Shown in pieces: positions 3,263-10,072 of a stretch of 64,000 nt of DNA. A program made the position numbers and the translations under genes. The notes under the pieces were generated by a model. The model searched no databases. It saw only the letters and a program-made list of their open reading frames with translations, and had not been told where the DNA came from. How positions within the stretch are numbered: position 1 is the stretch's first letter; the number at the start of each line of letters is the position of its first letter. Location: positions 204,740-268,739 of IMG/VR virus record IMGVR_UViG_3300032296_003307; one strand, written 5' to 3'.

Positions 3263-3315
3263 TATTGTCTTTAAGACCTTAAGAAAACCCATCTCAAAAA
3301 GATGGGTTTTTTTTT
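3251..3315 (+). terminator. Intrinsic terminator with competing antiterminator
   Basis: Terminator AAAACCCATCT(3284-3294)/AGATGGGTTTT(3300-3310) plus a T9 run. Alternative 8-bp helix GAGATGGG(3251-3258)/CCCATCTC(3288-3295). Confidence 0.8.
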
Positions 3316-3487: not shown

Positions 3488-3493
3488 CAAAAC

Positions 3494-3628
3494 ATCTCCG
3501 TAACTGTTAAAACGGTGAGTGGGTAAATGATGGTTGATTGGTCTGACACTACTTATACTAGTTTGTAGAGAAAAGTCAGAGCACTAAACAAGTAATTTAC
3601 AAGATGGGTTCGATTCCCATCGGAGATT
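3494..3628 (+). ncRNA. tRNA-like RNA with a greatly extended central arm
   Basis: Acceptor ATCTCCG/CGGAGAT, T-arm ATGGG-TTCGATT-CCCAT, mini D-arm ACTG/CGGT, nested helices GTAAAT/ATTTAC, TCTGAC/GTCAGA and CTAC/GTAG. Confidence 0.7.
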
Positions 3629-3634
3629 CAAAAT

Positions 3635-3757: not shown

Positions 3758-3849
3758 TTGATTATGGTGTAATAGGGCACACTGGCCTTAGTTGCTTCTT
3801 AACAGAAGTGGACGGGGCTGGGGATTGGGTTCGATTCCCTTTAATCAGC
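3758..3849 (+). ncRNA. tRNA-like RNA with an elongated anticodon arm
   Basis: TTGATTA/TAATCAG acceptor, D-arm GTGT-AATAGG-GCAC, long arm CTGGCC...GCTTCT-TAAC-AGAAGT...GGCTGG, T-arm GGG-TTCGATT-CCC. Confidence 0.7.
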
Positions 3850-3853
3850 AAAT

Positions 3854-4382
3854 GACCCCACAATTAACAGTAGTACTCGACTGTTATGGTGTGTGAACCC
3901 GACTTGAAGTCTTCGGGGCTATGGGGGATAGATACACTTGACGTGAAATTTGTATAACCTCTTATAAACGGGGTTAACCGACATGGGGAAGTTCAGTCGG
4001 GTACATCGGGAACAAGTATGACTGAGTCCCCCATTATGGATTAAGGGGGTTAGGGGCTTTAATTAGTCGTAATACAATCCACAAGTTGTAGAAACACTGG
4101 ACAATTCTACAATATACACTCTTCTTCCGAGTGAGACCAGACACGTAACTATGTGGTAGGGTGAAGATGTCCTGAGGGTAATATCGTTGTTAATTGTAAG
4201 GCTTATGGTCCGAAAGGATAAGTTGAAACCCAAAGGCACAACGGTATGATAGTACAGACCTACCTTGGATGGTTACTATGTTCTGACGAATCTTGGAAAT
4301 ATAGGTAGGGATATTAATTCGCCAACTATTAAAACTTAAAGGTGTTCCTATAATGGCGTAGGGATGATTCAACACCTTTTTT
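3854..4382 (+). ncRNA. Large structured non-coding RNA candidate (~520 nt)
   Basis: No credible ORF, GC content above the flanks, many helices including a long-range 10-bp pairing 3860-3869/4188-4197. Confidence 0.6.
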
Positions 4383-4386
4383 ACAT

Positions 4387-4464
4387 CGCGGGATGGACTG
4401 GAGATGGTACCAGCTGAGTCTCATAAGCTCAATCACGGGGGTTCGAATCCCTCTCCCGCTACCA
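4387..4464 (+). tRNA. tRNA-Met(CAU), atypical (C1.U72 mismatch, encoded CCA)
   Basis: CGCGGGA/TCCCGCT-A-CCA, anticodon arm TGAGT-CTCATAA-GCTCA. Confidence 0.85.
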
Positions 4465-4467
4465 AAT

Positions 4468-4538
4468 CGTGGATTGGTGTAATGGTAACATATTGGGCTC
4501 ATAACCCAAAGTTCCGAGTTCGAGTCTCGGGTCCGCAA
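4468..4538 (+). tRNA. Initiator tRNA-fMet(CAU)
   Basis: C1.A72 mismatch and three consecutive G-C pairs in TTGGG-CTCATAA-CCCAA. Confidence 0.92.
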
Positions 4539-4544
4539 CTAAAT

Positions 4545-4584
4545 GCCGGAGGACTCCCATGATAGTCCCATGGGTCCGGCTCCA
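4545..4584 (+). ncRNA. CCA-ended tRNA minihelix-like element
   Basis: GCCGGA/TCCGGC stem stacked on CCCATG/CATGGG with a 7-nt loop, followed by T-CCA. Confidence 0.55.
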
Positions 4585-4585
4585 T

Positions 4586-4657
4586 GCGGGTGTCGTATAA
4601 AGGCTATTACTTCAGCCTTCCAAGCTGAAGATGGGAGTTCGATTCTCCCCACCCGCT
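4586..4657 (+). tRNA. tRNA-Gly(UCC)
   Basis: GCGGGTG/CACCCGC-T, TCAGC-CTTCCAA-GCTGA. Confidence 0.95.
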
Positions 4658-4662
4658 CAAAA

Positions 4663-4735
4663 GCGAGAGTGGCTCAGTTGGTAGAGCATGACCTTGCCAA
4701 GGTCAGGGTCGCCAGTTCGAACCTGGTCTCTCGCT
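4663..4735 (+). tRNA. tRNA-Gly(GCC)
   Basis: GCGAGAG/CTCTCGC-T, TGACC-TTGCCAA-GGTCA. Confidence 0.95.
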
Positions 4736-4805
4736 CGAATGTGAATCTTAAAAAGGGCACTTCCGTCTCGTTGAGCGGCACGCTGAGCCCGGATTCACAT
4801 ATCAC

Positions 4806-4877
4806 GGTCTCATAGTTAATCGGCTATAATATCGCCCTGTCACGGCGAAGTGCCGGGTTCGATTCCCGGTGGGACCG
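4806..4877 (+). tRNA. tRNA-Asp(GUC)
   Basis: GGTCTCA/TGGGACC-G, TCGCC-CTGTCAC-GGCGA. Confidence 0.95.
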
Positions 4878-5075
4878 CAAAATTCAGTCAGGGTCGAGCC
4901 ACGTTGTGCCACGACTGAATGATAGGTAAGGAAGGACAAGAGGTGGCCGTGACTACTCCTTACCGTTAATTTATGTATTTATTGGTATGTTTAAACGACT
5001 ACTAAAATACTTGGAATCAATAGAACAACACAGAATGAACGCCATTATTTTTGGTGGAAAAGGGTTGTTGTAGTT

Positions 5076-9686: not shown

Positions 9687-9691
9687 GTTTG

Positions 9692-10072
9692 TGGAGGTGG
9701 AGGGTATCGAACCCTCGTCCAGTCTACCTTGACTGTAAGGTACTACACGTTTAGGTTAACATTTGCTAATGTTCCAAACTTCACAATTCCCTTATTTTAT
9801 AGTGGTTCGGTTTACTGAGAACTAATCCTCCACTTGTTTCTTTTAAGATAGAAACCACACCTCTAAAGGACTTATGTTCCTAGGTTAATGTCCTCCCGAC
9901 CTGAGTGTTATAGCGATTAGGCTACAACTGAAGCCTCTTCACGGAACAAACCGCAAGCTGCCATGTTATTTAAAACGTTGCCGTCTAATTGGTTAAATCA
10001 GTTTTTAATGAGTTAATTCAGCTCATACGTGCACCTTACCTTCAAAAATACCTGTCAAATCCAGTCACCCCC
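9692..10072 (-). ncRNA. ssrA: tmRNA
   Basis: 5' GGGGGTGACTGGATTTGAC, 3' GAGGG-TTCGATA-CCCTC-CACCTCC-A with G3.U70. Tag ORF 9982-9917 encodes (A)GNVLNNMAACGLFREEASVVA. Confidence 0.92.

What the first reader, a model, noticed from the sequence alone, without database searches (positions are those of the whole stretch)
4545..4584. 40-nt CCA-terminated minihelix between tRNAs
Seen: GCCGGA-GGACT-CCCATG-ATAGTCC-CATGGG-TCCGGC-T-CCA, a 12-bp coaxial acceptor-plus-T-arm-sized helix with a 7-nt loop. The bulged GGACT is complementary to AGTCC in the loop. It has an encoded CCA although most neighbouring tRNAs do not. Established: minihelices can be aminoacylated in vitro. Inference: a natural anticodon-less aminoacyl carrier or decoy.
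Basis: partly seen in the sequence, partly recalled or inferred. Interest (0 to 1): 0.6.

Follow-up and report, generated by a model that had tools for sequence, protein, structure and literature searches.

The report
CCA-ended hairpin in phage tRNA array
A 40-base hairpin shaped like the top half of a tRNA and ending in CCA really does sit in a freshwater jumbo phage's tRNA gene array, but only this one phage lineage has it, so it is most likely a recent spacer cassette that tRNA-processing enzymes cut out.

Summary
It has a 6-bp stem, a 5-nt 5' bulge, a second 6-bp stem, a 7-nt loop, an unpaired U and then CCA. All 12 pairs are Watson-Crick and 9 are G-C.

The hairpin sits like a gene in a tightly packed tRNA array of a 268.7-kb, 32% GC freshwater jumbo phage: tRNA-Met, C-UAAAU, hairpin, U, tRNA-Gly(UCC). 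Only 3 of the 30 tRNAs encode CCA.

No tRNA finder or Rfam model matches it, and its loop is not a T-loop.

It is not conserved. Relatives at 74% and 66% terminase identity fill the same slot with unrelated hairpin modules of 44 to 302 nt. Only near-identical strains carry it: one metagenome contig and three lake or reservoir runs. Their three variants all fall at unpaired positions. No similar element turned up elsewhere in this genome, in the relatives' arrays, or in six other phage tRNA arrays.

The CCA is weaker evidence than it looks. All 27 CCA-less tRNAs already encode N73-C followed by A-rich sequence, so UCCAU is one or two changes from the default tail.

My best reading is a lineage-specific cassette, co-transcribed with the array and released as a minimal RNase P substrate. 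Charging or a decoy role is not excluded and has no support. Interest is modest.

The parts
4468..4539 (+). Upstream neighbour: initiator-like tRNA-Met(CAU) with a C1xA72 mismatch. It ends N73-C and has no encoded CCA.
   Evidence: ARAGORN; Rfam tRNA model, 55.2 bits; tail read.
4540..4544 (+). 5' leader spacer TAAAT. It is the same A-rich, U(-1) leader found before most tRNAs of this array.
   Evidence: A T4540A variant is seen in run X11.
4545..4550 (+). Outer, acceptor-like stem, 5' strand GCCGGA. It pairs with 4575-4580.
4551..4555 (+). 5-nt 5' bulge GGACT, complementary to loop bases 4564-4568. This gives an alternative hairpin, not a pseudoknot.
4556..4561 (+). Inner, T-stem-like stem, 5' strand CCCATG. 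It pairs with 4569-4574.
4562..4568 (+). 7-nt loop ATAGTCC. It is not the TTCRA T-loop present in all 30 tRNAs of this phage. A population variant, A4562T, falls here.
4569..4580 (+). Continuous 3' strand CATGGGTCCGGC of both stems. This is the uninterrupted side of the 12-bp stack.
4581..4584 (+). Unpaired discriminator-like T followed by the encoded CCA.
4585..4585 (+). Single-base spacer T before tRNA-Gly. A T4585A variant is seen in run X9.
4586..4658 (+). Downstream neighbour: tRNA-Gly(UCC). RNase P cleavage at its 5' end would set the hairpin's 3' end at CCA plus one base.
   Evidence: ARAGORN; Rfam tRNA model, 63.4 bits.

Best explanation
The hairpin is a young, lineage-specific cassette in a fast-changing slot of a jumbo phage's polycistronic tRNA array. 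It is transcribed with the tRNAs. It offers a 12-bp stacked helix, G+1, U-1 and a free UCCA, which is the known minimal substrate of bacterial RNase P. RNase P would therefore cut at its 5' end (4544/4545) and at the 5' end of the next tRNA (4585/4586), and a 3' exonuclease would remove the last U. That would free a stable RNA of about 40 nt and leave the upstream tRNA-Met with only a short trailer. Its role is probably neutral or cis-acting: a spacer the processing machinery can deal with. It does not decode. What is shown: the structure, the position, the absence from relatives and the modular turnover of the slot. What is inferred: transcription, RNase P cleavage and a discrete product.
For: Structure: it forms and folds independently inside the Met-hairpin-Gly precursor.

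Punctuation: it follows the array's usual pattern, with an AAAU leader before G+1 and one base between CCA and tRNA-Gly.

Transcription unit: no promoter-like or terminator-like site lies between 4400 and 5000. A terminator at 3281-3313 precedes the array.

Transcription: a 170-nt contig from a metatranscriptome spans 4498-4667, running from Met through the hairpin into Gly.

Slot turnover: in relatives the same slot holds 44 to 302 nt of unrelated hairpin modules. The two-hairpin module that fills the slot in the clade at 74% terminase identity lies after tRNA-Asp in this phage (4883-4966). Other cassettes, including an HNH-type ORF, come and go nearby.

Strain variants: near-identical strains from several lakes keep the hairpin. 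Their three variants (4540, 4562, 4585) all lie at unpaired positions outside the CCA.

Published biochemistry: hairpins made of an acceptor stem plus T-stem and loop are cleaved at the canonical site by RNase P RNA, and the RCCA tail pairs with its P15 loop (review PMC11143913).

Precedent: the T4 tRNA cluster contains the stable non-tRNA RNAs rnaC and rnaD.
Against: No read data show 5' or 3' ends or a 40-nt RNA species. The RNA contig has depth 2 and could be contaminating DNA.

The host, and therefore its RNase P type, is unknown.

Three variants at unpaired sites give only P of about 0.07 (my arithmetic: 19 unpaired of 46 positions, cubed). The 100% identity to L107 is uninformative at 1-3% local divergence.

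Other hairpin modules in the same arrays lack any NCCA tail, so processing by RNase P is clearly not required of a spacer module.

A perfect, G-C-rich 12-bp helix with a 7-nt loop is more tRNA-like than a mere spacer needs to be.
Confidence: 0.45

Rival explanations
1. It is a trans-acting minihelix RNA. Once released with a mature CCA end, it either gets charged (its acceptor end matches Thr and partly Gly identity) and serves as an anticodon-less aminoacyl donor, or it acts as a decoy that soaks up enzymes or host defence toxins that act on tRNA acceptor/CCA ends.
For: The geometry is tRNA-like: 12 stacked bp, a 7-nt loop and a free NCCA. G1-C72, C2-G71, C3-G70 and U73 equal the acceptor end of the phage's own tRNA-Thr and partly match both tRNA-Gly genes. 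The stems and the CCA are unchanged in all strain variants seen. From my own knowledge of the literature, minihelices are substrates in vitro for several aminoacyl-tRNA synthetases, the CCA-adding enzyme and EF-Tu.
Against: It is restricted to one species-level lineage. Sister clades put unrelated modules in the slot. No second example was found in 1 Mb of relatives' DNA, in IMG/VR, in GTDB genomes or in six other phage arrays. The loop lacks T-loop residues. The genome has no FemAB-type transferase. The CCA is only 1-2 changes from the default N73-C-AAA tail.
Confidence: 0.12
2. It is a chance or neutral hairpin spacer. It is one of many interchangeable hairpin cassettes. Its tRNA-like size and its CCA are accidents, it is not cut at its own 5' end, and it simply stays on a trailer or is degraded.
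For: The folding z-score is only -2.2. The genome holds 56 strict hairpins of this kind with any tail, so about one with CCA is expected. C74 is encoded after all 27 CCA-less tRNAs, which makes CCA a near neighbour of the default tail. The slot tolerates many unrelated fillers.
Against: It is the only such hairpin next to a tRNA in this genome and in the relatives' arrays, even when the tail is relaxed to N-C-(A/C)-A. All 12 pairs are Watson-Crick with 9 G-C, at 65% GC in a 32% GC genome. Helix length, loop size, U(-1)/G(+1) and the unpaired N73 all match the RNase P minimal substrate at once.
Confidence: 0.25
3. It is the remnant of a tRNA gene that lost its D arm, anticodon arm and variable region through an internal deletion, leaving the acceptor stem and T arm.
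For: It occupies a gene-sized slot with tRNA-type punctuation. The order acceptor-like stem, T-like stem, N73 is that of a tRNA. The first three acceptor pairs and U73 equal those of tRNA-Thr.
Against: The loop ATAGTCC lacks the TTCRA motif kept by all 30 tRNAs of this phage, yet the stems are perfect. That pattern does not fit neutral decay. No tRNA with a GCCGGA/TCCGGC acceptor exists in this genome or in four large relatives. No relative has a tRNA in this slot.
Confidence: 0.08

Closest known systems
Synthetic acceptor/T-arm 'minihelix' or model hairpin substrates of bacterial RNase P (McClain, Guerrier-Takada and Altman; reviewed in PMC11143913)
   Same: A stack of about 12 bp closed by a 7-nt loop, a single-stranded NCCA 3' tail, G at +1 and a short leader with U at -1. 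Such hairpins are cleaved at the canonical site, and their CCA pairs with the P15 loop.
   Different: The known substrates are laboratory constructs cut out of real tRNAs and keep a true T-loop. This one is genome-encoded, has a 5-nt 5' bulge at the stem junction and a non-T-loop sequence, and its cleavage is untested.
Phage T4 stable RNAs rnaC and rnaD (species 1 and 2) in the T4 tRNA cluster
   Same: They are non-decoding structured RNAs encoded inside a phage tRNA array and separated from their neighbours by a few bases. rnaC keeps a T arm and an acceptor-like end, and rnaD is followed by ...CACC-A. As far as I know, their function is still unknown.
   Different: The T4 RNAs are 119 and 139 nt with several helices, and there is no sequence similarity. 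In this window the better counterpart of rnaC is the 146-nt tRNA-like RNA at 3489-3634, not the 40-nt hairpin.
tRNA-like domain of tmRNA, and plant-virus tRNA-like 3' ends
   Same: Acceptor/T-arm mimicry with a CCA end and no anticodon arm. This phage also encodes a tmRNA at 9689-10072 on the minus strand.
   Different: Those are parts of larger RNAs with real T-loops and defined identity elements (G3:U70 in tmRNA). This hairpin has C3-G70 and no T-loop. The only Rfam tmRNA or tRNA matches lie elsewhere.
t-elements of plant mitochondria, and other natural non-tRNA RNase P substrates (4.5S RNA precursor, phage-encoded small RNAs)
   Same: Stem-loops that resemble the top half of a tRNA and are used as cutting signals by tRNA-processing enzymes. 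This comparison rests on my own knowledge.
   Different: They come from different organisms and contexts, do not sit in tRNA arrays, and generally have no encoded CCA. No homology was tested.

Membership tests
Canonical tRNA (Rfam RF00005 / ARAGORN) | Cloverleaf with D arm, anticodon arm and T arm, detectable by tRNA models. | tested here: not met
   ARAGORN finds 12 tRNAs in the window and none at 4545-4584. Rfam gives no hit there even at E<=10.
Canonical tRNA (Rfam RF00005 / ARAGORN) | T-loop consensus (T54-Psi55-C56-R57-A58, TTCRA in DNA). | tested here: not met
   The loop is ATAGTCC (TTAGTCC in one strain). All 30 tRNAs of the phage have TTCRA.
Minimal (minihelix) substrate of bacterial RNase P | About 12 stacked base pairs equivalent to acceptor stem plus T stem, closed by a loop. 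| tested here: met
   6 + 6 Watson-Crick pairs that are continuous on the 3' strand, with a 7-nt loop and 96% of the folding ensemble. A 5-nt bulge interrupts the 5' strand.
Minimal (minihelix) substrate of bacterial RNase P | Single-stranded 3' N73-CCA, plus a 5' leader with the cleavage site before +1. | tested here: met
   U-CCA is unpaired. The leader is UAAAU with U at -1 and G at +1.
Minimal (minihelix) substrate of bacterial RNase P | Actual cleavage by RNase P at the -1/+1 bond. | not testable with these tools
   This needs an enzyme assay or RNA end-mapping. The laid runs were contigs, which show no ends.
Aminoacylatable minihelix (Thr or Gly identity) | Acceptor-end identity nucleotides of the cognate tRNA. 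| tested here: inconclusive
   G1-C72, C2-G71, C3-G70 and U73 equal the phage tRNA-Thr(UGU). The two tRNA-Gly genes share 1:72, 2:71 and U73 but have G3-C70. The host and its synthetases are unknown.
Aminoacylatable minihelix (Thr or Gly identity) | Charging by a synthetase. | not testable with these tools
   A biochemical assay is required.
Conserved functional small RNA of this phage group | Presence in related phages with compensatory changes in the stems. | tested here: not met
   It is absent from relatives at 74% and 66% terminase identity, which have other modules in the slot. It is present only in near-identical strains, with no stem variation at all.
T4-type stable RNAs of phage tRNA clusters (rnaC/rnaD) | A non-tRNA structured RNA encoded within a phage tRNA array and spaced like a tRNA. 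| tested here: met
   Position and spacing; T4 layout. This is a likeness of context only. No sequence or structural homology is apparent by eye in the T4 rnaC/rnaD sequences and folds.

The most novel reading that the evidence does not exclude
A phage makes a free-standing, genome-encoded acceptor/T-arm minihelix of about 40 nt with a mature CCA end. In the cell it is recognised by acceptor-end-reading enzymes. It would either be charged (Thr- or Gly-like identity) or act as a sponge for host defence toxins that modify or cut tRNA 3' ends. That would make it the first natural anticodon-less 'top-half tRNA'.
Probability: 0.08. Interest if true: 0.8.

Novelty: new variant of a known kind. Interest (0 to 1): 0.35.

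Why it matters
If the hairpin is released as a CCA-ended 40-mer, it would be a natural counterpart of the laboratory minihelices that defined how RNase P, the CCA-adding enzyme, EF-Tu and several synthetases read the top half of tRNA. Those minihelices also underlie ideas on the origin of tRNA.

The more secure result concerns the array as a whole. In this group of freshwater jumbo phages, the tRNA arrays are mosaics of tRNAs and interchangeable structured RNA cassettes that turn over between close relatives. Several of these cassettes covary and match no Rfam family. That collection of unknown phage RNAs is probably a better target for study than this one hairpin.

Tried and rejected
Homologue searches with no result:
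- A stem-anchored pattern of the hairpin found no other copy in IMG/VR viral contigs. A looser pattern found none in 185,579 GTDB genomes.
- GenBank phages hold no close relative of the array, only generic tRNA hits.
- Two neighbouring proteins gave no related loci. The large terminase did.

Structural scans with no result:
- I scanned for CCA-tailed coaxial hairpins in the whole genome, in 1 Mb of relatives' loci, in 60 kb of the syntenic array of the 295-kb relative G001, and in six unrelated phage tRNA arrays. Only the candidate came up.
- Relaxing the tail to the phage's default N-C-A-A did not change this for this genome and the relatives' arrays.

Ideas rejected:
- Pseudoknot between bulge and loop: rejected on geometry because the linkers would be 0 nt. 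It is an alternative fold 3.3 kcal/mol less stable.
- 'CCA is encoded only where the tRNA is an atypical RNase P substrate': rejected. tRNA-Ile(GAU) and tRNA-His carry CCA but score 72.5 and 66.7 bits on the tRNA model.
- Homology with the GGTGGA...TCCACC hairpin that precedes tRNA-Gly in other relatives: 4 of 6 outer-stem positions match and two pairs differ on both strands. My estimate is that this could be chance (P of about 0.04), and the inner parts are unrelated. I leave this open.
- ORF 4543-4815: it runs through tRNA genes and is spurious.
- Phage-encoded CCA-adding enzyme (PF01743) and FemAB-type transferase (PF02388): neither is present.

Literature: full-text searches found no report of a natural minihelix in a phage tRNA cluster. 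One search failed on a term that was too short.

Full report
**What and where**

The window is the last 64 kb of a 268,739-nt IMG/VR virus record rated 100% complete. The genome has 32% GC, 30 tRNA genes covering all 20 amino acids, and a tmRNA. The window also encodes a large terminase, a portal protein and a major head protein. The same DNA is found in lake, reservoir and other freshwater metagenomes from many studies. This is a freshwater jumbo phage, and its host is unknown.

**The observation**

Positions 4545-4584 read GCCGGA GGACT CCCATG ATAGTCC CATGGG TCCGGC T CCA.
- The predicted fold is 6 bp, a 5-nt 5' bulge, 6 bp and a 7-nt loop, with a free UCCA tail. Its energy is -18.9 kcal/mol and it takes 96% of the ensemble. 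The z-score is a modest -2.2.
- All 12 pairs are Watson-Crick and 9 are G-C. The hairpin has 65% GC, against 47% for the array and 32% for the genome.
- The bulge GGACU is complementary to AGUCC in the loop. With no linker nucleotides the two helices cannot coexist. They form an alternative hairpin at -15.6 kcal/mol.

**The context**

The element sits exactly where a tRNA gene would sit. The order is tRNA-Met (4468-4539, initiator-like C1xA72), C-UAAAU, the hairpin, U, then tRNA-Gly(UCC) from 4586.
- The AAAU leader with U at -1 is the usual leader in this array.
- In a 191-nt Met-hairpin-Gly precursor, the hairpin folds on its own between two cloverleaves.
- Only tRNA-Ile(GAU), tRNA-His and the tRNA-Met at 4387-4464 encode CCA. 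The other 27 tRNAs end in N73-C followed by A-rich sequence.
- The genome encodes no CCA-adding enzyme.

**Is it a known RNA?**

No. ARAGORN and Rfam give nothing at this position, even at E<=10. The loop lacks the TTCRA motif that all 30 tRNAs keep.

**Conservation**

The terminase search found 361 related viral contigs.
- Four large relatives at 74% terminase identity have a syntenic array. Between the same tRNA-Met and tRNA-Gly(UCC) they carry a 94-nt two-hairpin module instead.
- In this phage, that two-hairpin module lies after tRNA-Asp, at 4883-4966.
- Other relatives fill the slot with 44, 72-73 or 222-302 nt built from different modules. One of them has 66% terminase identity.
- A relative at 91% identity is cut off before the slot. 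It shows an HNH-type ORF inserted between tRNA-Gly and tRNA-Asp.

The hairpin itself was found only in near-identical strains.
- Metagenome contig L107 is 95-99% identical over the aligned blocks. Its hairpin is identical, but neighbouring cassettes are gained or lost.
- Contigs of three lake or reservoir runs also cover it.
- The variants near it are T4540A in the spacer, A4562T at the first loop base and T4585A in the spacer after CCA. None falls in a stem or in the CCA. Three of three at unpaired sites is only weak evidence of constraint (about 0.07 by my arithmetic).

No tRNA with this acceptor stem exists in this genome or in four relatives. No similar CCA-tailed or C-A-A-tailed coaxial hairpin lies near tRNAs in this genome or in the relatives' arrays. 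None with a CCA tail lies in six unrelated phage arrays, T4 and two huge phages among them.

**How much does the CCA mean?**

Less than it first seems.
- Genome-wide there are 56 strict hairpins of this type with any 3-nt tail, so about one with CCA is expected by chance.
- C74 is already encoded after every CCA-less tRNA. UCCAU is therefore only one or two changes away from the default UCAAAU.
- The case for tRNA mimicry rests on several features occurring together: the helix length, the loop size, the unpaired N73, G+1/U-1 and the exact slot position.

**Mechanism**

Hairpins made of an acceptor stem plus T stem-loop with a 3' CCA are cleaved at the canonical site by bacterial RNase P RNA. 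Their RCCA tail pairs with the P15 loop. In T4 dimeric precursors the CCA affects cleavage (review PMC11143913).

I therefore infer three steps:
- The hairpin is transcribed as part of the array. No terminator or promoter match interrupts 4400-5000, and a 170-nt metatranscriptome contig spans 4498-4667 at depth 2.
- RNase P cuts at its 5' end and at the 5' end of tRNA-Gly.
- An exonuclease trims one base from its 3' end.

The result would be a stable CCA-ended RNA of about 40 nt, and the upstream tRNA-Met would keep only a short trailer. None of these steps is shown by data.

**Rival readings**

- A trans-acting role as a charged carrier or a decoy cannot be excluded. The acceptor end (G1-C72, C2-G71, C3-G70, U73) equals that of the phage tRNA-Thr and partly matches both tRNA-Gly genes. 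However, the narrow distribution, the non-T-loop and the lack of a FemAB-type transferase give it no positive support.
- A tRNA relic is unlikely. The stems are perfect while the loop is non-canonical, and no relative has a tRNA in the slot.
- A purely accidental hairpin remains a serious alternative.

**Comparison with known systems**

The hairpin works like a laboratory RNase P minihelix substrate. By context it resembles the T4 stable RNAs rnaC and rnaD. It is not a member of any curated RNA family.

**Verdict**

The feature is real and curious. It is confined to one lineage and is probably a recent cassette. Interest is modest unless RNA end-mapping shows a discrete CCA-ended product.

Noticed in passing
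window 3851-4386: A 536-nt non-coding stretch lies between tRNA-Leu and tRNA-Met. It is 95% identical to contig L107. The differences in its variable part look compensatory (AACCTC..GGGGTT versus AACACC..GGTGTT; CCGAC..GTCGG versus CTGAG..CTCAG). No Rfam family matches at E<=10. It may be a large structured RNA.
   Followed up: partly
window 3489-3634: A 146-nt tRNA-like RNA missed by ARAGORN. It has a 7-bp acceptor stem (ATCTCCG/CGGAGAT), a D-arm-like hairpin, a canonical T arm (GATGGGTTCGATTCCCATC) and the usual N73-C-AAAAT tail. About 85 nt replace the anticodon arm. Folding z-score is -2.9. It resembles T4 rnaC.
   Followed up: partly
window 4883-4966; L083 1410-1495 and many relatives: A two-hairpin module. 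Its stems covary between phages (TTCAGTC/GACTGAA versus GATGTAA/TTACATC; GGTAAGGA/TCCTTACC versus GAGTCAGA/TCTGACTC) and its loops are conserved. GCCAC in loop 1 and GGTGGC in loop 2 could form a kissing contact. It occupies different slots of the array in different phages.
   Followed up: partly
window 4740-4802: A hairpin module between tRNA-Gly(GCC) and tRNA-Asp, with a covarying outer stem in relatives (GTGAATC/GATTCAC, GTAAATC/GGTTTAC, GTGAACC/GGTTCAC). In L107 about 308 nt lie between the same two tRNAs in place of the 64 nt here, and in L095 an HNH-type ORF is inserted there.
   Followed up: partly
window 9689-10072 (- strand): A full-length tmRNA encoded by the phage (Rfam RF00023, 99.5 bits, E 2e-38). 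ARAGORN did not report it.
   Followed up: no
window 4387-4464 and 4468-4539: Two tandem initiator-like tRNA-Met genes with a mismatched 1:72 pair. The first is atypical (30.8 bits on the tRNA model) and encodes CCA. The second does not encode CCA.
   Followed up: no
whole genome (G000), all tRNA genes: All 27 tRNA genes without CCA encode C74 directly after the discriminator, followed mostly by AAA(T). This uniform N73-C-AAA tail hints at a particular 3'-end maturation route in the unknown host.
   Followed up: partly
G000 204118-204222 and 204283-204372 (just upstream of the window; L129 5119-5223 and 5284-5373): Two over-long tRNA-model matches (105 and 90 nt; 40 and 37.9 bits) that ARAGORN did not call. 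They may be tRNAs with insertions.
   Followed up: no
window 3758-3849: A 92-nt 'tRNA-Leu(UAG)' called by ARAGORN with its anticodon at position 32. It scores only 20 bits on the Rfam tRNA model and is absent from the near-identical contig L107.
   Followed up: no
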